From Podarcis muralis (taxonomy: Eukaryota), in contig NC_135667.1 of NCBI RefSeq assembly GCF_964188315.1, positions 24,490,001-24,554,000 of the forward strand: DNA of 64,000 nucleotides. Direction: 5' to 3'. Below are positions 35,319 through 64,000 of the stretch, one piece after another; within the stretch, counting starts at the first letter, position 1; every line of letters starts with the position of its first letter. Under the pieces are notes generated by a model. The model was not told where the DNA came from and ran no database searches. It saw only the letters and a list, made by a program, of their open reading frames with translations. The position numbers and the translations under genes are program-made.

Positions 35319-35506
35319 TTTGTTCATAGGGCTTATTAACATGCTACCTGTACAAGGAAGAAGATAAGGATTGTTAGGGTACAAATATTGATTAACCAGT
35401 TAGATTTAAGCACAGTGCCTTTTATCTAACCATCAAATCTAATGGTATTCTTTGCTTAATTGATTAATAGGCAAATGTTGTACTGGCCCTTTTGCCCCCT
35501 CAGTTT

Positions 35507-35644: not shown

Positions 35645-35679
35645 ATGGATATTGTCCTGAGAGTATCTGTGTCCATTCA

Positions 35680-35825
35680 TTTTATTTTTTTTTATTTTTA
35701 TTTTTATTTTTATTTTTATTTTTTTTATTTTTATTTTTATTTTTATTTTTATTTTTATCATAATCATCATCATCATCATTATAATAATAATAATTATAAT
35801 AATAATTATCATTATTATTATTTTC
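35680..35825. repeat. Compound microsatellite (TTTTTA)n(CAT)n(AAT)n
   Basis: Direct reading. Confidence 0.95.
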
Positions 35826-35924
35826 TATACCGCTTTAAAGAAAAAAATCTCAGAGTGCTTTTCAGCACATTAAAACATCAAATAAAACAATCCAGAATAA
35901 AACATTTTTAAAGAAAGTCAAATA

Positions 35925-40367: not shown

Positions 40368-40516
40368 GGAAGTAAGATTGCTCTTTTTTTCTTCAATATT
40401 TGCATTTTCTCTGTTGGAGGAAGAAGCTAAAAAGTGTTAATATTGATTAACAAGCTAATTTAAGCATGCTTCTTGAAATTTCATTATATATTCCACATTA
40501 TTTTGCTAATCAAGTA

Positions 40517-40999: not shown

Positions 41000-41099
41000 G
41001 TGGGAGGCAGTGGAAGACAGGAGTGCCTGGCGTGCTCTGGTCCATGGGTCACGAAGAGTCGGACGTGACTAAACGACTAAACAGCAGCAACAACAACAA
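41000..41099 (+). mobile_element. Bov-B/RTE LINE extreme 3' end
   Basis: gcctggcgtgctctggtccatgggtcacgaagagtcggac...aaacgactaaacagcagcaacaacaac; absent from the right arm (~51730). Confidence 0.8.
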
Positions 41100-43997
41100 G
41101 TAATCTTACAGTAATATGAAGCTATCTGGGGGCTTTTAAACTACTTCCTTTAGTTGCCTTACCCCACAAAAGAAGTTGCTATTAATGCCACTTGGAGAGC
41201 TGTCCCATCACTTGTGGCATTCAAACCCAGGTTTTTCAAAACTAAGTAATAGAGTATATATGTGTTTGTGAATAAGGCAGAATTCTAAGGCAACAGCCTA
41301 TTATGAATGTAGTCTGCTACAGATAAATAGTAAATTGAATGCATTATATTGACAAAAAATCTCCTAATGAATTTCACCTGCCAGTAGTGCTACTGTTTGT
41401 GCCAATATATGTCTCTAATACTTCAGTGGGTGATAATGATCTGGGGTGGATTCGTGTCCCCATGAAATGTAACACAAATCTAGTTCTGCCTGCATGAATT
41501 TTCATGTCATCACTTTCTTATTTTTATGACATGGGGAAAAAAAACCTGCTGCAAATTACCCAGTTACTGGGATCAAGGGTGCAGCCTCGATTGGGATCGT
41601 TCTTCCAGCACACAGACTGAATGGAACTGAACACAGCCCAGTTCCATCATACACGCATAACAAATGGACCACACAGTTGAATGATACAATATATCTGCAT
41701 CAGCTACATCTATTTGCCTTTGGAGCAACAATTAGGAATGTGTTTAGTATACCAGTTGGTCATCATTCATTTTAAAGTTGAGCACTCTAATAAGGACTGG
41801 TATCAGCATACAAGAGTATATAAGACCCCTTTAAAATTGATAGATGAGAAGAAAATAAAATGCTGATAGACACATCTAGATTACATCAGAGTAGAAGGAA
41901 ACTACCAAACCACCTTAAATCATTTTAAAATACCTTTGATGATAAGATTCAATTTTCTCTCCAGCTACTTTAGGGTACGATATGGTAAAGATGTCAGAAT
42001 CCATGCGTCTTCTCAATCAAGCTCTTTCAGCCTTCTTGCAGCACTTGCCACAATATGTGTAACTTTCCTCCCCTCCTTAAAATAGACTGCATATGTGAGG
42101 ATAATAGTCACTAAAGTGGCAACAGTAGACAAGGGAGGGATCATTTTTTTAAGTCTTATTTGTCATCTTGGGATCTTACTCCCAAGAGTCCAGCACAGCT
42201 GATTTGAAAACATTGTTGAAAGTTACTGCTTCTACTTTCACAGTAGACCCCCCCCCCAAAAAAAAGTATTTATATAGAAATTATACAGGAGGGGGCCCAA
42301 ATCAAACTTGTTTTACACCCCCTGGGAAAACTATTAAACCTGAAAGAAAGCCCACAAGTCGATGCAAAATTTTAGTGCAAGGATCAGAGGAGAGCTAGAG
42401 TATAACATTTATCCAGTGAAGTGACAATGGCCACTTACCCTTCTTCCACGGTGAGTGGCAGTTGCGGCCCACTACGGTGCCTCCCTAAGTCCCTGGAGCC
42501 TCGCCATGTTGCCCTGACTTTTGGGTTCCTCCCCAGCCACCACAGAGCATCTTGCCAATCCACGGTGGCCTAGGGGGGCGGTGGAGCTTTTGCAGGCTTC
42601 ACTCAGGTCCACTCCCTGGACTTATAATCAGGCCAACGCAACTCACTGTAGCCCAGTCAGCCTTGTAGTTTTGCTATGGACCCTTCCTCCCAACCACACC
42701 CTGTCATGCCTCGGTTCCCCACCGGGGGCTGAGGGGGATACACGCCCAATGCCTATGCCACGTTTTGCCTACATATGAAATTAATAAAATTGTGGCCTTT
42801 TAATCCCATTACAGTTGTCATGTCTATTCATTCTTCCCACCAGTCAGCTAGGCTCCCTGGGGGCATGGACCTGGGGGTACCCTGTAAATGCTGCTGCTGT
42901 TGGGGGGGGGGTGTATCACCCGTCCACCCCTCCAGGTCAGAAGATAGACTAAAGGATTCCGCCAAAGGACTAACCTGCCAAAATTGTGACTAGTGCTGCG
43001 GGGAAGGCAAAACCTAACAATCAGGGAAAATTCCTTCCCAGCTCCGAAAAACAGCAACCATTAAGGAATCATAGGAAAGCCCACTAAGCTGGATAGGAAA
43101 AGGTTAGAAGAAAAGCAGAAAAACAATAGCAATGCTAAAGGGTGGACATGGTGGGTCACATTACAAGGCTGACTGGGCTACAGTGAGTTGCGTCGGCCTG
43201 ATTATAAATCCAGGGAGTGGACCTGAGTGAAGCCTGCAAAAGCTCCACCCCCCAGGCCACCCTGGATTGGCAAGATGCTCCGCGGTAGCCGGAGAGGAAC
43301 CCAACAGTCAGGGCAACATGGCGAGGCTCCAGGGGCTTAGGGAAGCACTGTGGTGGGCCGCAACTGCCAATCACCATGGAAGAAGGGTAAGTGGCCATTG
43401 TCACTCCACTGGATAAATGTTATACTCTAGCTCTCCTCTGATCCTTGCACTAAAATTTTGCATGGACTTGTGGACTTCCTTTCAGATTCAATAGTTTTCC
43501 CAAGGGGTGTAAAACAAGATTGATTTTGTGTCCCACTCTTGTATAATTTCTACATAAATACTCCCCCCCCCCTACTGTCAATGTAGAAGCAGTAACTTTC
43601 AACAATGTTTTCAGATCAGCTGTGCTGGACTCTTGGGAATAAGATCCCAAGATGACAAATAAGACTTAAAAGTATGATCCTTCCCATGTCTACCGTTGCT
43701 AATTAAGTGACTATTATCCTCACATATGCAGTCTATTTAAAGGCGGGAAAAACAGTTACATGTCCTGTGGCAAGTGCTGCAAGAAGGCCGAAAGAGCTTG
43801 GTTGAGAAGATGCATGGATTCTGACATCTTTATAATATCGTCCCCTAAAGTAGCTGGAAAGGAAATTGAATCTTATCATTAAAGGTATTTTAAAACAATT
43901 TAAGGTGATTTGGTAGTTTCCTTTTACTCTGATGTAATCTAGAGGTGTCTATCAGCATTTTATTTTCTTCTCATCTTTCAATTTTAAAGGAGTCTTA

Positions 43998-44353
43998 AAG
44001 GTAAAGGTAAAGGGACCCCTGGCCATTAGGTCCAGTCGTGGCCGACTCCAGGGTTGCGGCGCTCATCTCACTTTACTGGCTGAAGGAGCCGACATACAGC
44101 TTCCGGGTCATGTGGCCTGCATGACTAAGCCGCTTCTGGCGAACCAGAGCAGCGCACTGAAATGCCATTTACCTTCCTGCCGGAGCGGTACCTATTTATC
44201 TACTTGCACTTTGAAGTGCTTTCGAACTGCTAGGTTGGCAGGAGCAGGGACCGAGCAATGGGAGCTCACCCCACTGTGGGGATTCGAACCGCCAACCTTC
44301 TGATTGGCAAGTCCTAGGTTCTGTAGTTTAACCCACAGCGCCACCCGCATCCC
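43998..44353 (-). mobile_element. Sauria SINE, full length
   Basis: 12-bp TSD AAAGG(A/G)GTCTTA (43986-43997, 44354-44365); single-copy empty site in the left arm near 41822-41833. Confidence 0.93.
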
Positions 44354-44832
44354 AAAGGGGTCTTACATACTCTTGAATGCTGATACCAGTCCTTATTAGA
44401 GTGCTCAGCTTTAAAATGAACAATGACCACCTGGTATGTTAAACAAATTCCTAATGAATGTTCCAAAGGCAAAAAGATGTAGCTGATGTAGATATATTGC
44501 ATCATTCAACTGTGTGGTCCGTTTGTGATGGCCGTATGATGGAACTGGGCTGTGTTCTGTTCCAATCAGTCTGTGTGCTAGAAAAAAGATCCCGATCAAG
44601 GCCACAGCTTTCCCCCCAGTAACTGCATAATTTGCAGCAGGTCTGCCCCCCCTATGTCAGAAAAATAAACGTGATGACATGAAAATTCATGCTGGCAGAA
44701 CTAGATTTGTGTTACATTTCATGGGGACACAAATATACCCCAGATCATTATCACCCACTGAAGTATTAGATACATATATTGGCACAAACAGTACCACTAC
44801 CAGCCTGTGAAATTCATCAGAAGATTTTATGT

Positions 44833-45090
44833 CAGGGGTCAGCAGACTTTTTCAGCAGGGTGGTGGTCCACTCTCCCTCAGACCTTGTGGGGCGGGGCGG
44901 ACTATATTTTGAAAATAAATATAACAATGAATGAATTCCTATGCCCCACAAATAATCCAGAGATGCATTTTAATTAAAAGGACACATTCTACTCATGTAA
45001 AAACACGCTGATTCTCGGACTGTCCGTGGGCCGGATTTGGAAGGTGATTCGGCCAGATACGACCCCCAGGCCTTAGTTTACCTACCCATG
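44833..45090. mobile_element. hAT-type non-autonomous element
   Basis: CAGGGGTCAGCAGACT / AGTTTACCTACCCATG ends; degenerate 8-bp TSD (TTTTATGT / TTTTGTGG); absent from the left arm. Confidence 0.7.
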
Positions 45091-45207
45091 TTTTGTGGCA
45101 ATATAATACATTCAATTTAATATTTATCTGTAGCAGACTACATTCAAAATAGGCTGTTACCTTAGAATTCTGTCTTATTCCCAAACACATGTATACTCTG
45201 TTACTTA

Positions 45208-45601: not shown

Positions 45602-46009
45602 TGTCAGGGAACTGCCATCGGAAGGACAGGAGGTGCAAAGGCTCCCTCAGGTTGAAAGAGACGGAGCAGCTGAAGAGGGAACCAGTAGGGGGCGAGCAGG
45701 AACTTCCAGGGAAAGTGAGTCGGAGGGGTGGCTCAGAGACGTTTCCAGCGAAAACAGTGGAGAGGTCTCAGGACCTCCTATAGGGACACCCACGCCTCGC
45801 CGGAAACTGTCACGCAGAGAGTCCAGAAGACGTGTTTCCGTGAAAGAGCTTTTATGTTGGAAACGTTTCCGAAAGCAACCACTTTCGGATTCTACTAGCG
45901 ATTGACGCAGCCATGCCGGAGGGGCTCCGTCACAGGCAGAGGTTTGAAAACCTGATCAAACTCTGAGGGACTTGCATTTTACGCACAAGCAGCTCATCAT
46001 CCCACCACA
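45602..46009 (+). repeat. 5' LTR
   Basis: TGTCAGGGA...CCCACCACA; matches 50692-51099. Confidence 0.96.
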
Positions 46010-46011
46010 GC

Positions 46012-46022
46012 AATCCGAAAGT
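46012..46022 (+). other. Self-priming primer-binding site (candidate)
   Basis: AATCCGAAAGT is the exact reverse complement of ACTTTCGGATT at 45881-45891 in the LTR; no TGG tRNA-type PBS follows the LTR. Confidence 0.8.
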
Positions 46023-46055
46023 CACTGAAAGCCAGCTTGTGCAAGCAGCGGCATC

Positions 46056-47075
46056 ATGAGCGACCCAGCCGGAACCGGAGGAGCAGGAGCAGCTGGAGGA
46101 GGTCCAAGCCTGGAAGAAAGGTACAGGGCGTTGGAGATCCAGCTGGCCATGCAAACGGCGAGGCTTGAGGAGAGGAGGGCTCAGGATGCAGAAAAGGGAA
46201 AGGAGAAAACCACCTCGATAGCCAGAAAGGTGCCAGGATTGGTGCAGAAATTCGGGGGAGATCCCAGAAACTATCATGCCTTTAGAACTGAGATGCAATA
46301 CGCTCTCAATCTGCAGTATGATGACTTCCCCGACGAGGAATCGCGAGTGGCTTTTGTAATTGGCCATCTCGAAGGGGGGGCGAAGGATTGGGTTCGACCC
46401 CTGATGGCAGTGAATAATGAGATACTAAAGGACACGAGGAAGTTTTTTCGTGCCATGGACCTGATGTTTTCCAGTGACATTGAGCAGGGGGTGGTACGAA
46501 GGCAGTTAATGGCTTGCAAACAGGGGAGCCGATCTGTCCGTGAGTACTGGACTGAGTTTACTATGCTGATTCATAAATTGGGGTGGGACCTATCAGCGGA
46601 ACCCATCCAAATGCTTTTTGAAGAGGGGCTTTCTTCGGCCGTTAAAGATGAACTTTCCCGGGGGCCAAGGGCGGAGTCTATGGACCAGCTGACCAAATCC
46701 GCGCTGGCCATAGGAGCGCGCCAGGAAGCGAGAGCTTTGGAAAGGCGGGAAGGGAAAGGAGAACGTTGGAGGGAACTGCGCATTCCGGACATTCCAGAGC
46801 CACCTTTCCCGCCGGCAGAGCCGATGGAAGTTGGAACAGCGCGGGCGCGCGCAGTTTCAAATCCCAGTGAAGGGCGGAAGAAGGAGGGAAAGAGCGCCAA
46901 GAAATGTTATCTCTGCCAACAGCCAGGGCACTTTGCCAGAGTCTGCCCACAAAGAAAGGAATGGCAAGGGATGGCAGGAGCTGTGGGGGAAAGGGAGGAG
47001 GAAAACAAGGAGCAAGTAAAAGCCAACGCCTGGCTGCCACCGTCGGGGCACAGCAGCCAGGCCAAAGAGCAGTGA
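46056..47075 (+). CDS. gag: Gag (retrotransposon capsid domain plus CCHC zinc knuckle), 339 aa
   Basis: ATG 47 nt after the LTR; retrotransposon-gag-like core (RVAFVIGHLEGGAKDW...CKQGSRSVREYWTEF); CYLCQQPGHFARVC. Confidence 0.93.
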   Translation: MSDPAGTGGAGAAGGGPSLEERYRALEIQLAMQTARLEERRAQDAEKGKEKTTSIARKVPGLVQKFGGDPRNYHAFRTEMQYALNLQYDDFPDEESRVAFVIGHLEGGAKDWVRPLMAVNNEILKDTRKFFRAMDLMFSSDIEQGVVRRQLMACKQGSRSVREYWTEFTMLIHKLGWDLSAEPIQMLFEEGLSSAVKDELSRGPRAESMDQLTKSALAIGARQEARALERREGKGERWRELRIPDIPEPPFPPAEPMEVGTARARAVSNPSEGRKKEGKSAKKCYLCQQPGHFARVCPQRKEWQGMAGAVGEREEENKEQVKANAWLPPSGHSSQAKEQ

Positions 47076-50000
47076 AAGTGCCCACGCCAGAACCACCCAG
47101 ACCTGCTTTAGTGATAGAAGTGTTACTAGAGCTGCCAAATGGACACCCCCTACAGGTCAAGGCGCTTTTGGATTCAGGCAGCTCCTGTAATTTTATGAGT
47201 AAGGAGTTTGCAGCTGAGCACCAGATACAGACCATCCCTTTAAGTAATCCCTTGCAGGTGACCACGATTGATGGCAGAGAGCTGTTGGGAGGAGAAGTTA
47301 GCCAACAGACTGTCCCGATGATAATGAGGGTGGCAAGGCACACCGAACGGATAGCGTTTAATGTGGCCACCTTGGGAGGAGCTCCCATCATCTTGGGGAT
47401 GAGCTGGCTGGCGCTACACGATCCGCTAGTGGGCTGGCATCAGAGGGTGGTCTCCTTTGGGTCAGCGCATTGCCTAGAACACTGCAAGCAGGGGAAGGTT
47501 CAGGGCGGAGACAGAGTCACCCTAGCCGGGATGGAAGTAATGGGCAGAGGGAAGGTGCCCCCGCAATACGCAGATCTGAGCAACGTATTCAGCGAAAGGG
47601 AAGCAGACAAACTGCCGCCGCATAGACCCTTTGACTGTCAAATCAACCTACTCCCTGGGGCCCAACTCCCAGTGGGCAAGCTGTACGCCATGTCCGACAG
47701 GGAGATGCAGGAGCTGAGGGAGTTCATTGACAAAAACCTGAAGCGAGGTTTCATCAGAGAGTCCCGAGCGGTGGGGGGCAGCCCAGTGTTTTTTGTGGAC
47801 AAAAAAAACACAGATAAGCCGAGACTTGTGTGTGACTTCAGGGCCTTGAATGCAGTGTCGGAACCCCTGGCTTTCCCTATGCCCCGAATTGATGACATTT
47901 TGACCAGGGTAAGGAAGGGAAAGATTTTTACAAAGCTGGACCTGCGGGGGGCGTACAATCTGATACGCATAAGGAAGGGAGATGAATGGAAGACCACCAT
48001 GTTCACCCCTTTGGGAGCCTTTGAATACCTCGTTATGCCCTTCGGTCTACAAGGAGGCTCCGCGTGCTTTCAAGCGTTTATTAACCACGTTCTGGGGCCT
48101 TTGCTCTACAAGAACTGTGTGGCCTTTTTAGACGACGTGTTGGTGTATTCGGAGGATGAGGAGCAGCATGTGAGGGACGTTCGAGAAGTGTTGGGCAGGC
48201 TGCAAGCCAACCAGCTGTGGGTGAAACTGGAGAAGTGCCAGTTTCATACCAAGGAGGTGGAATTCCTGGGGTACCGCTTGTCAGACAAGGGATTGGCCAT
48301 GGATCCAGGCAAGGTCCAAGCGGTACTGGAATGGAAGACACCGAAGACCAAGAAGGATGTGCAAAGATTCTTGGGGTTTGGGAACTTTTATCGGAAGTTC
48401 ATCAAGAACTTTGCCCACTTGACGGCGCCCATCACCGACTGCCTCAGCAGCAAGAAGAAATTTGTTTGGACGGCGGAGGCGGAGCGAGCATTTGAAGAAC
48501 TGAAAAGGGCTTTCGCCTCGGAAGAACAACTTCTGCATGTGGATTTACGAAAACCCATGAGAGTGGAAACCGATGCGTCCGACCGGGCGGTAGGGGCGGT
48601 ACTTCTTCAACCGGGGAGGAGTATGTCAGAGTGGAGACCGTGTGCCTTCTTCTCGCGGAAGCTGAATAAATCCGAGAGGAACTACACGGTGTATGACAGG
48701 GAACTACTTGCCATTCACGAAGCGTTCCGGAGGTGGAGACATTTATTAATTGGGGCGCAACACAAGGTGCAAGTGTGCACCGACCACAAGAATTTAGAGT
48801 ATTGGAGAACAGCTCGAGTGCTCAACCAACGACAAGTGAGATGGGCACAGGAATTCTCTAAATTCAACTTTGAAATTTGTTATGTGCCAGGTCCAGAAAA
48901 CGTCAGGGCGGACGCTCTCTCACGCAAACCAGAGTATTGGGAGGGGGAGGGGGCGATTGAAGAGAGACATGTCATCCCTGAGGACCGCTGGGTGTGTGGG
49001 GCGGCGCTGGTGGGGCAACGAGAACTGGTAGAGGAAACGGAAAATGATGAATATGCCCAGGATAAGCTCAGAGGACTCAGGGGGGAGGGCGAGAGCCCCG
49101 AAGGTTTTGAGGAAAGAAATGGGGCATTGTATTACAAAGGGGCACTGTATATACCCGAAGGTGAATTGAGGGGGAGAGTACTCAAGCAGTTGCACGATAG
49201 CCCCACGGCGGGACATTTTGGGCAACACAAGACCATGTGGTTGGTTACCAGGGAATTCTGGTGGCCCAAGGTGAGGGAAGATGTAAGGGAGTATGTAAGA
49301 GGGTGTGACCAATGTCAGCGAGCCAAAGGGGAAAGACGGGCGCCGGCAGGGTTATTAGAACCATTACCCACACCAGAACGGCCTTGGGAAGCGGTATCAA
49401 TAGATTTTATGACGGATCTGCCGAAGTCCAAGGGGAAAACAGCCATCATGGTAGTAGTAGACCTGTTAACAAAGATGTGCCACTTTGTAGCATGCTCACA
49501 TGCAGTCACAGCGGAAGAAACAGCGAAGTTGTTTGTAGAACACATCTTTAGGTTGCACGGGGCTCCCTTGAGGGTGATCTCGGACCGCGGCAAACAATTT
49601 ACTTCCAGGTTCTGGAGGAAGCTCATGAGCTTGCTGCACGTGGAAGTCAATTTTTCAACGGCCCGGCACCCTGAAACCAACGGGCAGGCGGAAAGAGCAA
49701 ATGGCATTCTTCAACAATATCTGAGGTGTTATGTCAATGACAGAGAGAACGATTGGGTCGAAAAGTTGGCGCTGGCAGAATTTGCCTACAATAATGCGGA
49801 GAATGTGTCCACAGGGATGAGCCCCTTTTTGGCTAATTACGGGTGTCACCCCAGGGCATTTCCAGGGGAGGGAGGGGAGAGATGGAGCGTTCCAGCGGCT
49901 GAACATTTTGTAGAAGAGATGGAAGCGATCCATCATCAGCTCCAGCTCAACTTAGAAAGGGCCAAGGCACAATATAAGAAGCAGGCAGACAAGAACAGAA

Positions 50001-50995
50001 GGGAAGGTGAAACCATAAGGGTGGGGGATCAAGTGTGGCTGTCAACCCAAGGGTTGCCGTTCAAAGGGGGTTGTAAGAAATTGAGGCCCAGAAGATTGGG
50101 ACCCTTTGAGGTCATTCAGCAGGTCAACCCGGTGGCTTTCAAACTCCGGTTACCCAACCACATGAAATTGCACCCAGTGTTCCACAGGTCGTTACTGTCA
50201 CCATACAGGGGGGGACGTGAAGGGGAGCACGTCAGGGGACCAGCCTTGGAAGAGAGGGAACGCAGCAACCATGTAGCGGAAATCCTCGATTCCAGGTGGA
50301 AGGGAAATCAGGTAGAGTATTTGGTGGCGTGGGAAGGGGAACCGGAGTCAGAAAACACCTGGGTGACTGCAGGGGAGGTCAATGACGAGGTTTTAACAGA
50401 AACGTTCCACCAAAGATTCCCTAGGAAACCACAGCCGGTAGAAAGGTTTAGGAGGGAGTACTTCGGCACCACCGACGAGGAACAGGAAATGGAAGGATTC
50501 ACGGAGTCGGAGTTGGAAGAGGGAATAGACTCCGAAGACGAGGAGTATCGAGAGACGAGGGACAGTAGCAGGTGGAGGGAAGTGTTCGAAACTTCGGACG
50601 ATGAGGAAGGTTCTTTCAGGGGTTTTACTTCCTCCCAGCCCGGAGGGGAGGAGACGGGAGGGGGTGAAGGGGGCCCTGGAGGGGAGGTGGATGTCAGGGA
50701 ACTGCCATCGGAAGGACAGGAGGTGCAAAGGCTCCCTCAGGTTGAAAGAGACGGAGCAGCTGAAGAGGGAACCAGTAGGGGGCGAGCAGGAACTTCCAGG
50801 GAAAGTGAGTCGGAGGGGTGGCTCAGAGACGTTTCCAGCGAAAACAGTGGAGAGGTCTCAGGACCTCCTATAGGGACACCCACGCCTCGCCGGAAACTGT
50901 CACGCAGAGAGTCCAGAAGACGTGTTTCCGTGAAAGAGCTTTTATGTTGGAAACGTTTCCGAAAGCAACCACTTTCGGATTCTACTAGCGATTGA
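46904..50995 (+). CDS. pol: Pol (protease, RT, RNase H, integrase, chromodomain, C-terminal extension); -1 frame relative to gag, entered by frameshift rather than at the TTG shown in the ORF track
   Basis: LLDSGS protease; KLDLRGAYNL and FLDD RT motifs; ETDASD RNase H; HHCC (LHDSPTAGH...CDQC), D-D-E core, GPF motif; chromodomain VAEILDSRW...YLVAWEG...ENTWV. Confidence 0.95.
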   Translation: MLSLPTARALCQSLPTKKGMARDGRSCGGKGGGKQGASKSQRLAATVGAQQPGQRAVKVPTPEPPRPALVIEVLLELPNGHPLQVKALLDSGSSCNFMSKEFAAEHQIQTIPLSNPLQVTTIDGRELLGGEVSQQTVPMIMRVARHTERIAFNVATLGGAPIILGMSWLALHDPLVGWHQRVVSFGSAHCLEHCKQGKVQGGDRVTLAGMEVMGRGKVPPQYADLSNVFSEREADKLPPHRPFDCQINLLPGAQLPVGKLYAMSDREMQELREFIDKNLKRGFIRESRAVGGSPVFFVDKKNTDKPRLVCDFRALNAVSEPLAFPMPRIDDILTRVRKGKIFTKLDLRGAYNLIRIRKGDEWKTTMFTPLGAFEYLVMPFGLQGGSACFQAFINHVLGPLLYKNCVAFLDDVLVYSEDEEQHVRDVREVLGRLQANQLWVKLEKCQFHTKEVEFLGYRLSDKGLAMDPGKVQAVLEWKTPKTKKDVQRFLGFGNFYRKFIKNFAHLTAPITDCLSSKKKFVWTAEAERAFEELKRAFASEEQLLHVDLRKPMRVETDASDRAVGAVLLQPGRSMSEWRPCAFFSRKLNKSERNYTVYDRELLAIHEAFRRWRHLLIGAQHKVQVCTDHKNLEYWRTARVLNQRQVRWAQEFSKFNFEICYVPGPENVRADALSRKPEYWEGEGAIEERHVIPEDRWVCGAALVGQRELVEETENDEYAQDKLRGLRGEGESPEGFEERNGALYYKGALYIPEGELRGRVLKQLHDSPTAGHFGQHKTMWLVTREFWWPKVREDVREYVRGCDQCQRAKGERRAPAGLLEPLPTPERPWEAVSIDFMTDLPKSKGKTAIMVVVDLLTKMCHFVACSHAVTAEETAKLFVEHIFRLHGAPLRVISDRGKQFTSRFWRKLMSLLHVEVNFSTARHPETNGQAERANGILQQYLRCYVNDRENDWVEKLALAEFAYNNAENVSTGMSPFLANYGCHPRAFPGEGGERWSVPAAEHFVEEMEAIHHQLQLNLERAKAQYKKQADKNRREGETIRVGDQVWLSTQGLPFKGGCKKLRPRRLGPFEVIQQVNPVAFKLRLPNHMKLHPVFHRSLLSPYRGGREGEHVRGPALEERERSNHVAEILDSRWKGNQVEYLVAWEGEPESENTWVTAGEVNDEVLTETFHQRFPRKPQPVERFRREYFGTTDEEQEMEGFTESELEEGIDSEDEEYRETRDSSRWREVFETSDDEEGSFRGFTSSQPGGEETGGGEGGPGGEVDVRELPSEGQEVQRLPQVERDGAAEEGTSRGRAGTSRESESEGWLRDVSSENSGEVSGPPIGTPTPRRKLSRRESRRRVSVKELLCWKRFRKQPLSDSTSD
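47028..47083 (+). promoter_or_regulatory. Predicted H-type RNA pseudoknot (frameshift stimulator)
   Basis: Stem 1 GCCTGGCTGC (47028-37) with GCAGCCAGGC (47053-62); stem 2 GGGCAC (47046-51) with GTGCCC (47078-83). Confidence 0.7.
50678..50691 (+). other. Polypurine tract
   Basis: GGAGGGGAGGTGGA immediately 5' of the 3' LTR. Confidence 0.85.
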
Positions 50996-51099
50996 CGCAG
51001 CCATGCCGGAGGGGCTCCGTCACAGGCAGAGGTTTGAAAACCTGATCAAACTCTGAGGGACTTGCATTTTACGCACAAGCAGCTCATCATCCCACCACA
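50692..51099 (+). repeat. 3' LTR
   Basis: Identical by eye to the 5' LTR; first 304 nt lie within the pol ORF. Confidence 0.96.
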
Positions 51100-51564: not shown

Positions 51565-52115
51565 TATAGCAGATGAGGGTTTGAATTAGGCCACAAGTGA
51601 TGGGACAGCTCTACAAGTGACATTAATAGCAGCTTCCTTTGTGGGGCAAAGCAACTAAAGGAAGTAGTTAAAAAACCCCCAGATAGCTTCATGTTACTGC
51701 AAGATTACTTAGAGTCCCCCAAACATGCAGACTGAGCAGAAATAGAAAATATTAGTTAATATATAAAGTTTGGAGTGAAATCAGTGTTTGAGATACTTTA
51801 GATACTTTATATAATAACAGATATGCAAGCTTCAATTTACAAATGGGCTATTTTGGCATAATCTTTAATCTCAATTGTTTTTACACTACTTGATTGGCAA
51901 AAGAATGGGGAATATATAATTAAATTTCAGGAAGCATTTTTTAAAAAATGTTCTATATTCTGATTTTAATCTGTTGGGATCAGCCCAGAGTGGCTGGGGA
52001 AACCTAGCCCGATGGATGGGGTATAATAAATAAATGATATAATTAGCTCATTAATCATTATTAACACATTTTAGCTTCTTCCTCCAACAGAGAGAATGCA
52101 AATACTGAAGAAAAA

Positions 52116-53051
52116 ATGAGCAATCTTACTTCCATGTCAACGTTTCTGCTGTGGGAATTCTCAGATGTACGAGAACTACAGATCTTATACTTCTTTCTGT
52201 TCCTAGGATTGTACTTGACCACCATGGCTGGGAATCTTCTCATTATTGCTGCATTTGCGCTAGACCATCACCTCCATACACCAATGTACTTTTTCCTAAC
52301 TAATTTGGCAATGATGGACATGGGCTCTGCTTCTGTCATGATGCCCAAATCATTAGCCAATTCCATCATGAACAGCAGGTCTATTTCTTACTCTGGGTGT
52401 GTGGCCCAGGTTTTCTTCTATATGTTCTTTGTCGCAGCAGATTTTGCCATTCTAACAGTAATGGCACATGATCGCTATGTTGCCATCTGCAACCCGTTAC
52501 AGTATGAGACAATTATGCACAAAGGAGCTTGTATTCAGATGACCCTCATTGTGTTGATTGCTAGTCTTCTTCATGCCATGTTACATACTTGTAGCACTTT
52601 TGCAATCACCTTCTGTTCAAATGACGTCCATCAGTTCTTCTGTGAAGTTCCAACATTACTGAAGCTCTCCTGCTCTAATATCTACCTTGTCGAAGTAGGG
52701 GTTATTGTGTTAGGGTGTTGCCTGGGACTAGGATGCTTCATGTTCATTATCATAACATACATGCAGCTATTTGCTACAGTGCGCAGAATTCCTTCAGTAC
52801 ATGGTCAGAAAAAAGCCCTCTCCACTTGCCTTCCCCACCTCACTGTTGTCTCTTTGTTTATGGGCACTGCACTCTTTGCCTATGCAAAGCCTCCCACTAA
52901 TGCTTCTTCTGATCTGGATATAGCTTTTGCTGTGATCTATACCATAATTCCTCCCATGTTGAATCCATTCATCTATAGCATGAGAAACAAAGAAATCAAG
53001 ACTGCTTTGTGGAAACTCTTAGATTTTGGGCATTCCTCTAAAAATAGATAA
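52116..53051 (+). CDS. Olfactory receptor, OR14-like, 311 aa, intact
   Basis: MSNLTS start (acceptor CAG at 52090); complete OR motif set. Confidence 0.95.
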   Translation: MSNLTSMSTFLLWEFSDVRELQILYFFLFLGLYLTTMAGNLLIIAAFALDHHLHTPMYFFLTNLAMMDMGSASVMMPKSLANSIMNSRSISYSGCVAQVFFYMFFVAADFAILTVMAHDRYVAICNPLQYETIMHKGACIQMTLIVLIASLLHAMLHTCSTFAITFCSNDVHQFFCEVPTLLKLSCSNIYLVEVGVIVLGCCLGLGCFMFIIITYMQLFATVRRIPSVHGQKKALSTCLPHLTVVSLFMGTALFAYAKPPTNASSDLDIAFAVIYTIIPPMLNPFIYSMRNKEIKTALWKLLDFGHSSKNR

Positions 53052-54876: not shown

Positions 54877-55458
54877 TATACAATTTTATTAGTTACATGC
54901 AACATTCTACATCATGGCAATCAACAATAAATAATTGTAAAAGGAATACATTTGCATCCATAATTAATTATTAGCTAATTAATACAATTTGTATCTCAAC
55001 CTACATCACTGGAACAAAAACATACATCATGCCTTTCAACCATTAAACAGTTGAGGTGTGCTTTGTCCAGGGCTTCTTTCCCCCAGCCAGAATTGAGTTC
55101 TGTCACCTTTCAGGTCAGCGTCTTTGCCATTATAAGAGAACAAGGTGAGTTCATGATGCATTCCAGCCCCTCGTTATCTAGAAAAATAGCACTACCTTTG
55201 CCTCTTACTTCCAGATGTGAAACAAAAGAAAAAAGCATGTTATAGGGTGGGGAACCTATGGACAGTCATATGCTGTTGGATTCTATGCCCCAGATAGCAT
55301 GACCTATGGATAGGAATCATGAGAACTGTACTCCAGAACATCTAGAGAGCACAGGTTCATCACTTCTGTTCTAGAGAGACAAATAGCTTAGGAAAGAGAA
55401 AGAATCAGTCTCACAGGAAAACTGTAGCAAACTGTGATGGCTTGGTCTCTCCCACAAA

Positions 55459-55867
55459 TGTGAGACGACTCTGCCTGTTAATTATTTCAGATTTATTGCT
55501 AAAACAACAAACTAGGATGGAGCTCCTATACTCATCATCCTCCCCAGAAGATGGAATTGCCCGGACTGAGCTCATCCCCGTTCCCCAGCACGGAAGCCCC
55601 CACCTTCTCTTCCGGTAACTTTTGTGCGTCTTGGCCACTTTTGAGATCCTACGAGATTTGGGAGAGAATGTTTCCTGCATTCCAACTTCTGGCTCACTAT
55701 TGGAACTCCAACACAGCTGCCTGTCACTTTGGCCCTGTTTTTCTCCTCCCCTTTGTTCCAAGCTCAGATTACAGCTGCTCTCCCCCTCCTCTCTGCTTTC
55801 CGCTGCTAACTGTTCTCTCCTTATGCCTGCTTCTGATCCTCCTGTCAGCACCTGAGCTTCGCTGACA
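55459..55867 (-). mobile_element. Solo LTR (409 bp) of a second Gypsy-like family
   Basis: Minus strand TGTCAG...CTCACA, 4-bp TSD CAAA on both sides, AATAAA near the 3' end. Confidence 0.8.
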
Positions 55868-56529
55868 CAAACTCTGGGATAGTCTATGGGATAAGCAGAA
55901 ATATATCACTGCAAATGGAACACTTGAACTTTGCAAGATAATATTTAATACACATAACACATTCATGTGTTCCATTGAAGTAAAAATTCAGTTCCATTGA
56001 ACTGAAAATTCTGAGAAAACTGGTTTCATGGCTGTGACCAAAAAGATGATGCATTTAAGTTTCCTTCCTGGCAGTAAGCAGGGGGGGGGGGGGAATCCAG
56101 AAACAACTTTCAAATCACAAAGCAGTTTCAGAAGAGGTTGCAAAACAATATATCCACCAGATGGTGGCCAAAGCAGGGTGTTCATATATGGTGCAGATCA
56201 GTGGCAGAGTGTATGCTTTGTAGGCAAAAAATAAATAAAATGCTGAATTTCTGGAACCTTGGGTGAAAAGATCCTAAAAGTCAGGTTAGTCAGTTCTGAG
56301 AAAAAAAATGATTTGGAGAGCTTTAGGGAAGACCTGCAAATGGGAAAATGCCAAGGGTGAATTTCCCAGAGGTATACTAGTGCATATGCATCCAAAAGGT
56401 ACTGCACAGCTGAATATGACTGAACACAAACACATTTGAGTATGTCAACATTTGAGTATGTCATGCTTTTCTTCTTATTATCTGTTCCCTTCTTCTCTTC
56501 TTCTTCTTCTTCTTCTTCTTCTTCTTCTT

Positions 56530-56790
56530 CTTCATTGTCATCATTATCATCGTCATCATTGTCGTCCATTTTTTAGAAAGCAACTGAACAACAAGGCATT
56601 CAGGGGAAAGATGGAACTCAGCAGTGCAGATGTAGTGGTTGAACATTTATCAAATCTGAGTATCTACAACATCGTTAAAACAAAACAACTAGAAGTGACT
56701 TTTAAAACTTTGAGGCAGCTGCCAAGACAAAATGCCTTAGGAAATATCAACACTCTTATAGACAAAATATAATCACATTTCTTTCTTATT
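56530..56790. repeat. Direct duplicate of ~63740-64000 (3' end and 3' flank of a V2R paralog)
   Basis: Near-identical sequence from ccattttttagaaagcaactg to aatcacatttctttcttat. Confidence 0.93.
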
Positions 56791-56868: not shown

Positions 56869-57770
56869 TCATGCTTTTCTTCTTATTATCTGTTCCCTGT
56901 TATTCAACTCAGGCCTCAACACAATGATATAAAATTTGGGTGCAAATATGCAGCCCAGCAACCCAGCACTAGAGGCTAAAATAGAAAAGATCTCCACAGC
57001 TACCATGTACTTTCCCTTAGAGCTTAGATAGGTTGGGATAAAGGATAACCAAACACTGCAAAAGACCAACATGCTGAAGGTGATGAATTTGGCTTCGTTG
57101 AAACTGTCAGGTAACTTTCTGGCAAGGAAAGCCACACTGAAGCTGATAATGGCCAGAAAGCCCATATAGCCTAAAACACAATAGAAGAAAGTCAGAGATC
57201 CCTCATTGCACTCCAATATAAGTTCTTCTCTTACTGAATGAATGTCAACATCTGGGAATGGGGGAGAAGTTACCAACCACACAAAGCAAATGCCTGCTTG
57301 GATGAATGAGCAGGGAAGAACAATGGAGTTAGCTAATGACTTCCCCACCCAATTCCTCATGCTGGATCCCGGTCTGGTGGCCATGAAAGCCAGGACCACT
57401 GTGGTGGTTTTGGCCAACACACAAGAAACAGCTACTGAGAATATGATTCCAAAAGCAGTTTGTCGGAGAAGACATGTCACCTTCTGTGGCTGGCCAATGA
57501 ATAGCAATGAACAAAGGAAGCAGAGCAAGAGGGAGACAAGGAGAGTGTAGGTGAGGCCCCGGTTGTTGGCTTTGACAATGGGAGTGCTGCGGTGCTTCAG
57601 AAATGTTGCTAGCGCCAGAGCTGTGATCAAGGAAGAGAAAAGGGCAAAAAGGGCTAAAGCGACCCCCAGTGGTTCTTTGAAAGACAAGAAGGAAGCCAGT
57701 CTGGGAACACAGGAATCTTGGTTCTTGCTTGGATAGCTTACGTCACTGCATTTGGAACAGTCATTCATAT
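56869..57770 (-). CDS. V2R exon 6 (7TM domain)
   Basis: Acceptor TTTTCAG|AT; [29 protein letters not shown] motifs. Confidence 0.95.
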
Positions 57771-60700
57771 CTGAAAAGGGAAAGATAGGTGCTTTATGCC
57801 GCCATCTCTGCTAGTTCAAGGCAACCGGAGGAACACCAAATGGATACAATGCAAAGGAATGGTTATGTACCTTTTTATGTTCATCTGGTAACACTCTAAT
57901 GTTTAAGGAGAAGGTGGGGGCAGGTGAGATTTACATCCTTTGGAGCAATAAACATGTAGCCTGCATCTGCTGCATTGTCACTTGCTTCTGCTTTCTGCTG
58001 CTCTATCTTTGGTGTGCTCTGTTGTTTATCAAGAAGGTTTGACATCATTTGGCAATATATTTCTTACCGTGTTGGACTGAAATCTTCCCTTCTGGACATG
58101 GGATGCAATCATAGCAGCAAAATGGATCCCCTTCCTTCACTTTCTTGCTAAAACCAGGACGGCAACTTTCACTACATACAGAATGAGGCTTTGCCTAATC
58201 CACAAATGAAAGAGGACCATGTAAGTATTAAAGAACAAAAGAAGAACAAAATATGGCTCAAGGTGGTACCACCTCCGTTTTACTCCAGCCCTGCCCACTG
58301 AAATTACTAGCAATTGGCTCCTACCTGATTAAACCAGCTGTGCCACGTTATGGCACTCTCATTGAGGCTGAATACATTGCCCAGAAGACCTTGGGGGTCC
58401 ACCTGTCCAACTTTCACTCTATGAAAGGATTGGTTTGAAGAAAAAATCCAGTTGAAGATGTCAAATCCAGCTACTAACTCCCCATTCTGGTCAAAGGAAA
58501 CCTGGTCACCAGCACTGTTGTTAAAGGAGACTCTTCTCAGAAAGTGATGGAACTAGAATGCAAAGGGAAATGTAAGAGTGTAGGGCATGATGCATTTTAA
58601 CAGTAGTTCATTGAATCTTTTAGATGGAGTTATAAAAATGCTTTCCCTTGATGAAGAGATGTCCCCCCCACCTCTACTCCCCTTTCCTCAAATTGCAGTA
58701 TAGCAATAACCAAATGAGAAAGAGTATTCATACATTTAAAGTTTACTTTTGAGAAGCTTCACTGAAATCTTTTTAGTTATTCCTGACTGGTAGCCTCCTT
58801 AAATACACCTAGAAACAAATGGTTTCTCACGTTATTATTTAAAACAACAACAACAGTTTTTTGAGTATATAATTGTTTAAAAGAGTAGATAATATCTTGG
58901 TCTCGATATAGTTAGATACAGACATCCTTTTTCCTACTTCATAGAGAAATGACGTAATAGGAAATTGGGAGCCATATGAAGTTTGGGAGTCAGTTCACTT
59001 GGCTTTTTGAGCCTGGTGGAATGTGTGCATAGACAAGCTAGGTGCTGTACTCCTTGGGTCCATTACCTGCCAGAACTGTAGATTCCAAAGGTTCATCCCC
59101 CTTTCATCCCCCATTGCTCTGTATGGGAGTCTAGATGAGAACATCGTTTGTAAAGCATAGGCCACAGCATAGACAGCGTTGTAGATGCTGTAGCTGTGGC
59201 CAATCATCCTTGTTTCAAAAAAGGGCCCCGGAAGACTCTTCAGTTTCTCTTCCGCAGTACAAAAATCTCCACCCAATCGCTCAGTTACTCTATTTGCAAA
59301 TATACAACCAAATGCTTGTTGCCAGAAGTCCAGGATAAAGCCATCGCCTTTTGCATTCAGAGGCTTCCTATTCTCAACATAATGTTGAAATCCTGAAGGA
59401 TCCTTGGAGTGAATTGAGAAGGAGAGAGCACCATGGATCATGTCTATACTCCAAGTCCTTTGATGTGTGATAGATGTGAGCTCCATCTGGGCTGTCAGTA
59501 TCCACACAATACCTTTTTCTTTATTTGTCACATGTTGTTGTTCTGACAGGTATGAGAACCATCTCAATAATATAACTGAAAAAGATTCTCCATAGGCAAC
59601 CACTGCATTGGCTTTACCATCAATAATTTTATCATGTATTTTTGCCCCCTGAGTTAACATGCTATTAATTTCAGTGACAATTCCTTGTGTGTGACTTCTT
59701 TCTATGAAGGCAAAACAGATACCACTCTGGGAGAAAAGTGGAAATACAGTTTGGACAAATCTATCTCCATATTCATCATTGGTAGTAAGGATTCCAATCC
59801 ATATCCACTTGAAATGCAGAAGCAAAGAGAGAATCCCTGCATACTGAGTGGCTTCCTGAGGTGCCATCTGGTAAAAAGAAAGGCCTGGGGTTTTGTCATT
59901 CATCACTGGAGCAGGGCTATATATGAGCTAAAGGAGGTGTGAAGGAGAATAGAGAATGAGAGAAGTTCCACCCCCCCCCCTATTTGAAGTCTTCAAAGTA
60001 ATCTACATTCATCAAATGAACAATTCTTATAACTCTCTTGGAACGTTAAAATTGTATTCTTCCCATGTAGCATTTTGGCTTCAGTGACAAGTTACTGAAA
60101 CGTTACGCAGCTACTCTACTACTAGGGAAAATTCACTTTCCAGATGAGGTGTAGAAGAGGACCCCTCTGACTCCCACTCCCCTTCCAGGACCCCTGATGA
60201 CACTGTGGTAGGACCCTTATCCAGACCTCTGTGCTGATGTTCCACTTCTGCCAAATTGGAGGCTTCCTCCTTCTCCCCTTCAGAACAATCCTGCCAACCT
60301 CACTGTGTCCTGATTGTCTTCATGGGACCCATGATAAGTTTATGCTTTTAAAGTACATTTCTTAATTCAGATTTACAGATCAATTCAGCGGGCTGTATTG
60401 CTTGGCTTAGATTTGATGTCCATCTCTTTATAAGGAAAATCTACCTGTTTGCTCCAATTGTACCTCCTTCTGTCCCTTTCACCCTTTGTCTGCCTCTAAA
60501 AATCTGGAAGGATCTGTCCTACCTGTGGAATCTTGTAAATATCCAAGACTGTTGCCATGTGCAAGGAGGTCAGTGGGTCCAGTCCTCCAATAACTGCAAT
60601 GAGGTTATCCTGGATGTCACATTTGTAGTTTGGGAGATGTTTCCATGGTGTGAATATAAGTAGCAATGTAGCATGGTAGGTCCCTTTGGCAGTGAAATAG

Positions 60701-61964: not shown

Positions 61965-63669
61965 CCTGTATACATTATTATTATTATTATTAGTAGTAGT
62001 AATAGTAGTAGTAGTAGTAGTAGTATACAGCCCTTCCTCTGAAGATTGCAGGGCAGTTTACAATATTTTAAAAAAAGACAAAATGTGTAACATAGTAACA
62101 AAGGAATTAAGAATGAAGACAAAAATGGGGAACAAATCCAGACTGGTACACATAATTTTTCTTCTCATGTCCAAAATCAGAAAACAAATTACCATTCAAC
62201 AGCAATACAGCATTTTAAAAAGTGTGCACATTTTCCTTGCCTTTAAAATGACTTCTTCTGATTCCTTCTATTCCTGTCTTTTACGGTTCCAACTTAAATG
62301 CAGAACATCAGGGATCAAACTGGAAGTCTTTTGTCTATATTTTCTTCTGGCCCCAGATTGGAATACTATGAGGTATATTTATATCATCCTACAAATTTTG
62401 TAATTTGTTTATTTTTTGTTTTTGGAGGTGGCCACTGCAACTCCTTGGGGTTTTAGAAAAAGAGGGGAAATAATTATAGTCCTTTTGATAATTAAAAGGC
62501 AGGGTAATCTCCAGTCTGAAGTTGCGAATTCTCTGCGGAATTGCTGCAGACCGCCCCCCCCCCCCCCCCGAACAAATTTGTTCCTTTTCATTTAACTAAG
62601 TTGAGTTCTGGCCATAGAGAAAAGGGTCAAAATTCAGGACTGTTCTTTATTTTTAAGGACAAACTTTAATATTGATATGTGAGTGAATCGCATAATTGTT
62701 TGGGATAGAAACACATGAGCCAGTTTAATTAAAGGGCTAAGAAAACTAGGAATTATTATTATTATTAGGAATATTCATTTTTTATTGGTTATTTAAACAT
62801 GATTTTTTTAAAAAAGGAACCTAGGACTAGATACATAATTTTGAGGAAGATTTATACTGGGCAGCTGGTGAACAGTAGGTGGTGAGCAGCATTTCAGTCC
62901 CTGACTACAAGAACGACTCTGGACTTCAGACTGCAAGAAAATGAAGAGATAATTATACCCTTTTATTTCTCCTTCACGTTAACTTTTCCCTGATTCTAGA
63001 TATGTATCACTAAGTATGAGTTTAACAGGAAAGCAAGCAACTTATGTAAGGAACCGTGAGACAGTGAACCTGATAAGCAGCCACATATCTAGATTATCAA
63101 AAGAGACACGTGCAAAGTTTTATTGTCCTGCTTATGGTGACAAATGTACTGTGCATGTATTTCATGCGATACCTCAGATGCATTTTCATGATGTTCATTC
63201 GTTCCACTGAGCTGAAGCTTCTGAGAGAACATGTTTTATATATATTACCCATTTGTGCCCCCAAACACAAACTGTTATTTAGCAAAATACACAAGTAATT
63301 AGCAAGCCTTCAGTTTATAAGACATTCCCTTTTTAAGGGGGGGGGGGTGAGCAGGAATTTGCGGGAACTGAGTTCCCTTACCTTTTTTCTGCTGGGGCTG
63401 GAATGGATATACACCCAATGCCTGAGCCAAAAATCTACCTATATCTGTAATCAGTAAAGTTGTGGCCATATCTAATCCAGATCATTGTCTCCTTGGGTGT
63501 TTAAATCACATCTTACTTTAGCCACTGCCTGTGTTTGTGTGTGTGTGCGTGTGGCACTGCAACTAAGTCCACAGTAAACAAACCAACAAGCAGACAAGCA
63601 AGCAAGCAAGCAAGCAAGCAAACAAACTTCATGGTGAGTTCCTCTACCTTTTCTTCCAGAACATGACCC

Positions 63670-63711
<42 letters not shown>

Positions 63712-63780
63712 GTTATTATTATTATTATTATTATCATCATCATCATCATCATTGTCATCATCATCGTCGTCATCATCCAT
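63670..63780. repeat. (TAT)n(CAT)n microsatellite
   Basis: Direct reading. Confidence 0.95.
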
Positions 63781-63874
63781 TTTTTAGAAAGCAACTGAAC
63801 AACAAGGCATTCAGGGGAAAGATGGAACTCAGCAGTGCAGATGTAGTGGTTGAACATTTATCAAATCTGAGTAT

Positions 63875-64000
63875 CTACAACATTGTTAAAACAAAACAAC
63901 TAGAAGTGACTTTTAAAACTTTGAGGCAGCTGCCAAGACAAAATGCCTTAGGAAATATCAACACTTTTATAGACAAAATATAATCACATTTCTTTCTTAT
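63875..64000 (-). CDS. Probable C-terminal tip of the next V2R gene, entering from the right edge
   Basis: The duplicate at 56770-56830 extends this sequence into a V2R-like end (PGLSNREHLIRKK); frame is open from 64000 to TAG at 63875. The rest is outside the window. Confidence 0.35.
   Translation of the reverse strand: MRKKCDYILSIKVLIFPKAFCLGSCLKVLKVTSSCFVLTML

What the first reader, a model, noticed from the sequence alone, without database searches (positions are those of the whole stretch)
55459..55867. A second, sequence-unrelated solo LTR keeps an ORF in the same phase with a similar basic/LxCW signature
Seen: 409-bp LTR (versus 408) with CAAA TSD; its frame is open from base 2 (T|GTC AGC GAA, VSE; compare T|GTC AGG GAA, VRE) through the whole LTR, giving an acidic/Ser-Gly stretch and then SPKSRRISKVAKTHKSYRKRRWGLPCW, parallel to TPTPRRKLSRRESRRRVSVKELLCW. 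No nucleotide similarity is evident beyond the termini. Inference: independent support that LTR-encoded Pol tails are a conserved feature of a squamate chromovirus lineage.
Basis: partly seen in the sequence, partly recalled or inferred. Interest (0 to 1): 0.7.

Follow-up and report, generated by a model that had tools for sequence, protein, structure and literature searches.

The report
Lizard solo LTR with open frame
A 409-base leftover end-piece (solo LTR) of a lizard retrotransposon keeps an unusually long stop-free reading frame that may be a fossil of the element's polymerase gene running into its own LTR, but the parent element could not be retrieved and the claimed shared peptide signature is no better than chance.

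Summary
The structure is real. Window 55459-55867, minus strand, is a 409-bp TG...CA unit with a 4-bp target duplication, a TATA and an AATAAA near its 3' end, and a sharp composition boundary.

Its frame starting at base 2 has no stop in 136 codons, while the other sense frames have 12 and 7. Dinucleotide shuffles give P = 0.0015 for that frame and 0.005 for any sense frame.

The neighbouring full-length chromovirus (45602-51099) does read pol 100 codons into its 3' LTR in the same phase. Podarcis Pol proteins from at least two families carry such tails.

The link of this LTR to a chromovirus Pol is unproven:
- The peptide has no relative in 1.84 billion representative proteins or among 198 chromovirus Pols.
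- The "basic/LxCW" parallel fails BLASTP, Smith-Waterman shuffles and a profile test.
- The target duplication is 4 bp, against 5 bp for the neighbour.
- The frame has no stop before the poly(A) signal.

This scan had already reported and followed up LTR-encoded Pol tails elsewhere in this genome (s1-152516, s1-179018). This case is therefore a weak extra instance, not independent proof.

The parts
55459..55867 (-). Solo LTR 'B', 409 bp, TG...CA termini (starts TGTCAG, ends CTCACA)
   Evidence: Sequence read. Purine-rich composition block with sharp edges. No pol or gag remnant anywhere near it (tblastn). No Rfam family and no tandem repeat.
55455..55458 (.). Target-site duplication, left copy (CAAA on the plus strand)
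55868..55871 (.). Target-site duplication, right copy (CAAA on the plus strand)
55414..55905 (-). Stop-to-stop open frame of 164 codons. It covers the whole LTR in the phase where LTR base 1 is a third codon position. There is no ATG at its start; the first Met is at LTR codon 62.
   Evidence: shuffle statistics
55585..55668 (-).
   Evidence: similarity tests negative
55527..55530 (-). TATA at LTR position 338, a candidate core promoter
55492..55497 (-). AATAAA at LTR positions 371-376, 33 bases before the LTR end, on the same strand as the open frame
   Evidence: A poly(A) signal this close to the 3' end is described for Sushi-clade chromovirus LTRs (PMC3601003).
45602..51099 (+). Comparison element A, a full-length chromovirus. 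Its 408-bp LTRs (45602-46009 and 50692-51099) are 100% identical, and its 5-bp target duplication is GTAGT. It carries gag at 46056-47075 and pol at 46904-50995.
   Evidence: Pfam finds PR, RT, RNase H, integrase, SH3 and chromo domains.
50692..50995 (+). The part of A's pol that lies inside its 3' LTR: 100 codons plus the stop, in the same phase as the frame in B
   Evidence: The tail is conserved in Podarcis muralis proteins and includes an in-frame 15-residue indel.

Best explanation
55459-55867 (minus strand) is a fairly young solo LTR, left when the two LTRs of a retrotransposon insertion recombined. The most likely parent is a chromovirus (Ty3/Gypsy) of the lacertid lineage that also contains element A. 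In that lineage the integrase C-terminal extension is translated across the polypurine tract into U3, so the LTR base T completes a codon and GTN (Val) follows. On this reading U3 served both as promoter and as coding sequence for a disordered tail, acidic/Ser-Gly first and basic later. The stop-free frame in the solo LTR is a fossil of that coding constraint and has no function now.

Shown here: the LTR anatomy, the phase, and the statistical excess of the open frame. Inferred: the parent's identity and that pol used this frame.
For: LTR anatomy: TG...CA ends, a 4-bp duplication, TATA at 338 and AATAAA at 371 on the same strand as the frame, plus a sharp composition block.

Open frame: 0 stops against 12 and 7 in the other sense frames. 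P = 0.0015 by dinucleotide shuffles. For the first 94 codons alone P = 0.027, comparable to 0.04 for A's proven coding tail. There is no start codon at the head of the frame, which fits a continuation from upstream.

Likeness to element A: same phase, same first six bases (TGTCAG) and near-identical length, 409 versus 408 bp.

Podarcis Pol proteins of a second family, 53% identical to A, show a Gly-rich stretch followed by D-V-R and then more than 200 further residues. That is what a translated polypurine tract plus TGTCAGG would give.

Genuine tails of the two families are themselves barely alignable, with a best E of 0.027 in a 10-sequence database. B's lack of similarity is therefore weak evidence against the reading.

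Scan notes s1-152516 and s1-179018 report confirmed Pol tails in LTRs elsewhere in this genome.
Against: No parent was found. There were no hits in 1.84 billion representative proteins, in the word search, or among 198 chromovirus Pols including 78 extra Podarcis cluster members.

The peptide signature is not significant.

The target duplication is 4 bp, against 5 bp for A. This points to a different integrase.

The frame has no stop before AATAAA or before the LTR end. As it stands, a pol mRNA ending in this LTR would lack a stop codon, whereas A stops 104 bp before its LTR end.

The protein language-model 'recognition' score for the peptide is at the level of shuffled sequences.

Only one copy is available, so selection cannot be measured.
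Confidence: 0.5

Rival explanations
1. It is a genuine solo LTR of some family, but the open frame is a chance product of a purine-rich U3. It was picked out because it is open, and it was never translated.
For: For a pre-chosen frame the probability is small but not negligible, about 0.5% for any sense frame. The last 42 codons alone are open in 10% of shuffles. The frame runs past both LTR ends and past the poly(A) signal without a stop. There is no protein relative and no codon-usage signal. The language-model recognition score is at the level of shuffled sequences. The genome holds very many solo LTRs (127 scan notes), so some open ones are expected.
Against: The open frame is exactly the phase used by element A, a 1-in-3 coincidence on top of P = 0.005. 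The other two sense frames carry 12 and 7 stops. A's proven coding tail also shows no codon-usage signal and only P = 0.04, so these tests have little power.
Confidence: 0.3
2. It is the LTR of a different kind of retroelement, an endogenous retrovirus or a non-chromoviral Gypsy that makes 4-bp duplications. Its last gene (env, or an accessory gene) overlaps U3, or U3 holds a separate ORF as in MMTV sag.
For: The target duplication is 4 bp, against 5 bp for the chromovirus next door. There is no similarity to any chromovirus Pol tail.
Against: The frame has no ATG at its head; the first Met is at codon 62. The first six bases and the length match element A. AATAAA lies close to the 3' end, as in Sushi-clade chromovirus LTRs. 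There is no hit to any retroviral protein in Pfam or in the large searches.
Confidence: 0.1
3. It is not an LTR at all. The TG...CA ends and the 4-bp repeat are coincidental, and the block is some other purine-rich insertion or exon-like relic.
For: No second copy could be examined. No paralogous empty site exists in the window. A given 4-mer preceded by CA recurs by chance about once in 4 kb.
Against: Too many features coincide: a length within 1 bp of A's LTR, a 9/10 match of the first ten bases, TATA then AATAAA near the 3' end on the sense strand, and composition edges at the proposed ends.
Confidence: 0.1

Closest known systems
Element A in the same window (45602-51099) and its Podarcis muralis relatives (UniRef 'Gypsy retrotransposon integrase-like protein 1', P0001-P0003, P0121-P0143)
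   Same: LTR of nearly the same length that also starts TGTCAG. The reading frame enters the LTR with base 1 as a third codon position. The encoded peptide is acidic/Gly-Ser-rich and then basic.
   Different: There is no nucleotide or peptide similarity beyond the termini. The duplication is 4 bp rather than 5 bp. A's frame stops 104 bp before the LTR end, whereas B's never stops. A is a complete element and B is solo.
Plant CRM-clade group A chromoviruses, and Beetle7 and Bingo1-4/7 of Beta vulgaris
   Same: The gag-pol ORF extends past the polypurine tract into the 3' LTR, which then encodes the integrase C-terminal (targeting) motif (PMC3059260; PMC3605345).
   Different: Those are plant lineages. 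In CRM the LTR encodes the chromodomain-like CR motif itself, whereas in the lizard elements the chromodomain lies upstream of the polypurine tract and the LTR encodes an extra low-complexity tail. For B the link to pol is not shown.
Sushi-clade (vertebrate/fungal) chromovirus LTRs as modelled by Benachenhou et al. 2013
   Same: [quoted passage not shown]
   Different: That study describes U3 as T-rich and reports no coding. B's U3 is purine-rich and open.
U3-overlapping genes of retroviruses (MMTV sag, HIV nef); comparison from general knowledge, not tested here
   Same: Protein-coding sequence lies inside U3.
   Different: Those are separate genes with their own start codons and spliced mRNAs. 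B's frame has no start codon at its head.

Membership tests
Solo LTR of an LTR retrotransposon | TG...CA termini with short inverted repeats | tested here: met
   Starts TGTCAG and ends CTCACA.
Solo LTR of an LTR retrotransposon | Direct target-site duplication of 4-6 bp | tested here: met
   CAAA on both sides.
Solo LTR of an LTR retrotransposon | Promoter and poly(A) signals in one orientation | tested here: met
   TATA at 338 and AATAAA at 371 on the minus strand. These are motif matches only.
Solo LTR of an LTR retrotransposon | No adjoining internal gag-pol region | tested here: met
   tblastn of A's gag and pol finds nothing outside element A.
Solo LTR of an LTR retrotransposon | Multiple genomic copies with the same boundaries | not testable with these tools
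   There is no other copy in the window.
Chromovirus (Ty3/Gypsy with chromodomain) of the element-A lineage | LTR linked to a pol with an integrase chromodomain | not testable with these tools
   Parent not retrievable.
Chromovirus (Ty3/Gypsy with chromodomain) of the element-A lineage | Same target-duplication length as the lineage's integrase produces (5 bp in A) | tested here: not met
   4 bp in B against 5 bp (GTAGT) in A.
Chromovirus (Ty3/Gypsy with chromodomain) of the element-A lineage | Shared integrase-recognition terminus | tested here: met
   9 of the first 10 bases are identical to A. The 3' ends agree only in CACA.
LTR-encoded Pol (integrase) tail | ORF continuous from integrase across the polypurine tract into the LTR | not testable with these tools
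   Met for element A. For B only the phase and the openness of the LTR part can be seen.
LTR-encoded Pol (integrase) tail | Peptide similarity to known tails of the lineage | tested here: not met
   BLASTP E = 8.7. Profile of 21 C-termini scores -6.8 bits. No phmmer hit among 198 Pols. The test has low power: genuine tails of the two families reach only E = 0.027.
LTR-encoded Pol (integrase) tail | Stop codon upstream of the poly(A) site | tested here: not met
   No stop in this frame anywhere in the LTR.
LTR-encoded Pol (integrase) tail | Purifying selection on the frame among copies | not testable with these tools
   Only one copy is available.

The most novel reading that the evidence does not exclude
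Several lacertid chromovirus families with mutually unalignable LTRs, this one included, all translate their integrase tail out of U3 in one fixed phase and have each arrived at an acidic-then-basic, Trp-containing tail. U3 would then be a dual-use promoter and coding segment across a vertebrate retrotransposon lineage, and the tail a fast-evolving chromatin-tethering module.
Probability: 0.35. Interest if true: 0.55.

Novelty: new member of a known kind. Interest (0 to 1): 0.27.

Why it matters
If this LTR's frame really is a Pol tail, it would be a third, sequence-unrelated family showing that lizard chromoviruses routinely encode the end of integrase inside their promoter region. Published reports describe that arrangement for plant centromeric and beet chromoviruses, and I found no report of it for vertebrates in the papers searched. 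It would constrain how such LTRs evolve, because the same DNA is both promoter and protein. It would also point to a rapidly changing integration-targeting tail.

On its own, however, this solo LTR proves little. The phenomenon is better shown by the full-length element next to it and by cases this scan has already followed up elsewhere in the genome.

Tried and rejected
1. Searches for relatives of the 136-aa peptide, all blank:
- Word search restricted to 75-238 aa.
- Pfam.
- phmmer against 1.84 billion cluster representatives.
- ESM Atlas, best score 0.80, with recognition at the level of shuffled sequences.

2. phmmer, blastp and tblastn of the peptide and its DNA against 120, then 198, chromovirus Pols. 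The set included seven Podarcis clusters expanded with the listing of cluster members. Nothing was significant, and the weak tblastn matches (E about 0.001 per query, without composition correction, across 120 queries) reflect shared Glu/Gly/Ser richness.

Against the six-frame translation of the window it finds only A's own LTRs, and B scores -6.8 bits.

4. Nucleotide homology between A and B. blastn finds nothing. Global alignment gives z = 2.8, but this falls to p = 0.07-0.14 once the termini are trimmed and regional composition is kept.

5. A post-hoc motif test (basic cluster followed by L.CW) gives P = 0.00015 under residue shuffling. I reject it as evidence because the pattern was written after seeing both peptides.

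6. A codon-usage log-likelihood trained on A's gag and pol is uninformative. It also fails on A's proven LTR-encoded tail.

7. No paralogous empty site exists in the window.

8. Exact 20-23-mers of B are absent from viral contigs and metagenome contigs.

I did not try to get round either.

10. The word-based protein search cannot see full-length Pols when queried with a 136-aa piece.

Full report
**What is there.** On the minus strand, window 55459-55867 is a 409-bp unit that starts TGTCAGCGAA and ends CTCACA. It is flanked by the same four bases on each side, CAAA on the plus strand at 55455-55458 and 55868-55871.

Read from its second base, the frame gives VSE... and has no stop in any of the 136 codons. 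It contains the quoted basic stretch ending LPCW at codons 67-94.

**Is it an LTR?** Several independent features say yes.
- The ends are TG...CA with a short imperfect inverted repeat.
- There is a 4-bp direct duplication.
- The block is purine-rich on the minus strand and about 50% G+C, against 30-40% in the flanks. The change falls at the proposed ends.
- A TATA at LTR position 338 is followed by AATAAA at 371-376, 33 bases from the 3' end, on the same strand as the open frame. A poly(A) signal unusually close to the LTR's 3' end is what Benachenhou et al. describe for Sushi-clade chromovirus LTRs (PMC3601003).
- It is solo: tblastn with the neighbour's gag and pol finds nothing near it.
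- It matches no Rfam family and contains no tandem repeat.

What I could not show is that other copies exist. There is none in the window, and there is no paralogous empty site.

**Is the open frame more than chance?** The three sense frames have 12, 0 and 7 stops.
- In 20,000 dinucleotide-preserving shuffles, the frame starting at base 2 was fully open in 0.15%. Any sense frame was open in 0.5% and any of the six frames in 1%.
- Split in two, the first 94 codons give P = 0.027 and the last 42 give P = 0.10. The proven coding tail of the neighbouring element gives P = 0.04 by the same test.
- The stop-to-stop frame (55414-55905, 164 codons) overruns the LTR by 13 and 15 codons. It is one of only a handful of frames this long in the window that lie outside recognised genes.

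**The comparison element.** Copies at 45602-46009 and 50692-51099 are 100% identical and bound a 5.5-kb element with a 5-bp duplication, GTAGT. It carries gag at 46056-47075 and a 1363-aa pol at 46904-50995. Pfam finds protease, RT, RNase H, integrase, SH3 and chromodomain.

Pol crosses the polypurine tract and runs 100 codons into the 3' LTR. LTR base 1 is a third codon position, so GAT|GTC AGG reads D V R.

Podarcis muralis UniRef proteins are 88-97% identical over the whole Pol. A subfamily that is 75% identical over the last 254 residues keeps the tail, including an in-frame 15-residue indel. That element's LTR-encoded tail is therefore genuine coding sequence.

**Is B like A?**
- At the nucleotide level it is not. 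blastn gives no match. A global alignment scores z = 2.8 against shuffles, but this drops to p = 0.07-0.14 when 12 bases are trimmed from each end and shuffling keeps regional composition. What the two LTRs share is 9 of the first 10 bases, the length (409 versus 408) and a purine-rich-then-AT-rich layout.
- At the peptide level it is not either. BLASTP gives E = 8.7. The Smith-Waterman score of 41 is reached by 16% of residue shuffles.
A profile was made from the last 50 residues of 21 distinct Podarcis Pol C-termini from family A and a second family; their ends align without gaps around [LI]L[CSN]W. Against the six-frame translation of the window it recovers only A's two LTRs. The B peptide scores -6.8 bits, E = 1 even with a search space of one sequence.

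The "basic/LxCW signature" is therefore not supported. A motif test that does look significant (P = 0.00015) was written after seeing both peptides, and I discount it.

**Search for the parent.**
- The peptide has no hit in Pfam.
- It has none in the word-indexed protein collection at 75-238 aa.
- It has none at E <= 0.001 among 1.84 billion cluster representatives of any length.
- It has no meaningful neighbour in the ESM Atlas.
- A search with A's integrase-chromodomain region returned 807 relatives, of which 120 were listed. Expanding seven Podarcis clusters added 78 more. No protein in this set of 198 matches the B peptide or its DNA in any frame beyond compositional noise.

Exact words of B are absent from the viral and metagenome contig collections.

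These blanks are weak evidence. Representatives at 50% identity may carry a different tail, and repeat-masked annotation rarely reports transposon ORFs.

**What the Podarcis Pols do show.** A second family (P0009, P0015, P0161 and others) is 53% identical to A in the integrase region. It has a Gly-rich stretch followed by M-D-V-R-G-S-G and then more than 200 further residues, ending in a basic run plus ILSWC. That junction is what a translated polypurine tract followed by TGTCAGG in A's phase would give. This is my inference from the proteins, not checked on DNA.

Two further families, in Podarcis and in Anolis, end in RRSARL/RRSARI after a G-D-G-V or G-D-S-V junction. Pol tails that begin at a Val encoded by LTR bases 2-4 therefore seem common in squamate chromoviruses.

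The genuine tails of families A and F2 are themselves barely alignable. The best BLASTP E-value is 0.027 in a database of ten sequences. Failure to align B is thus only weak evidence against its being a third such tail.

**Points against.**
- The target duplication is 4 bp in B and 5 bp in A. Its length normally reflects the integrase, which suggests a different enzyme.
- The frame has no stop before AATAAA or before the LTR end. A pol mRNA polyadenylated in such a 3' LTR would lack a stop codon, whereas A terminates 104 bp before its LTR end. One copy cannot show whether other copies of the family terminate earlier.
- A codon-usage likelihood trained on A's gag and pol gives no signal for B. 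It gives none for A's own LTR-encoded tail either, so the test has no power.

**Verdict.**
| Reading | Probability |
|---|---|
| A real solo LTR (all readings below except the last) | about 0.9 |
| Frame is the fossil of a chromovirus Pol tail | about 0.5 |
| Chance open frame in a purine-rich U3 | about 0.3 |
| LTR of another retroelement type with a U3-overlapping gene | about 0.1 |
| Not an LTR | about 0.1 |

**Relation to what is known.** Extension of gag-pol into the 3' LTR is documented for plant CRM group A elements, whose LTR encodes the CR motif, and for Beetle7 and Bingo1-4/7 of beet (PMC3059260; PMC3605345).

Within this scan the same arrangement was already reported and followed up on other DNA of this genome: s1-152516 (a 356-residue tail) and s1-179018 (the last 116 codons of gag-pol in a solo-LTR family). 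First-reader notes s1-181820 and s1-179055 are similar. I did not verify those notes.

This LTR is at most one more member of that kind, and its evidence is weaker than theirs.

Noticed in passing
window 6973-7941(-), 13825-14769, 19869-20828, 25098-26105, 30148-31095, 34386-35384(-), 39447-40367(-), 52116-53051: A cluster of at least eight intact, single-exon ORFs of about 310 aa. Three were scanned against Pfam and match the olfactory receptor family 7tm_4; the others are assigned from the 5-6 kb repeat families. These repeat families account for most of the window's direct and inverted repeats.
   Followed up: partly
window 39452-40467 versus 52034-53049: A 1016-bp inverted repeat with 97% complementarity, which looks like a very recent inverted duplication of an olfactory receptor gene. 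The full-length chromovirus (45602-51099) lies between the two arms.
   Followed up: no
window 56869-57768(-) and 58995-59906(-): Exons of a type-2 vomeronasal receptor (Pfam 7tm_3 and ANF_receptor), about 75% identical to an NCBI Podarcis muralis model. The solo LTR lies about 1 kb downstream of the last coding exon on the same strand, so its AATAAA could lie in or near the gene's 3' UTR.
   Followed up: partly
protein P0005 (NCBI 'vomeronasal type-2 receptor 26-like', Podarcis muralis): This public gene model fuses Gypsy RNase H and integrase segments (83% identical to element A's pol) to V2R exons. It is probably an annotation chimera caused by a chromovirus insertion in a V2R locus.
   Followed up: partly
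window 41098-45207: A nest of inverted repeats just upstream of element A: arms 41821-42246/43572-43997, 41518-41832/44354-44668, 42299-42577/43248-43526, 41350-41536/44648-44834 and 41243-41359/45091-45207, at 86-92% complementarity. Together they form a palindrome of about 4 kb. It could be a long-TIR DNA transposon or an inverted duplication.
   Followed up: no
window 45602-51099: Element A has 100% identical LTRs, intact gag and pol, and a 5-bp target duplication, so it is a very recent insertion. Its LTR has no canonical AATAAA or ATTAAA.
   Followed up: partly
proteins P0016, P0194-P0196 (Podarcis) and P0011, P0014 (Anolis): These chromovirus Pols end in RRSARL or RRSARI. From memory, this resembles the HMGN nucleosome-binding core; I did not test it. 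Other notes of the scan mention the same motif.
   Followed up: no
window 35665-35843 and 63638-63807: Two related short-period (9-15 bp) tandem arrays 28 kb apart. In addition, 56523-56789 is repeated at 63734-64000 with 94% identity.
   Followed up: no
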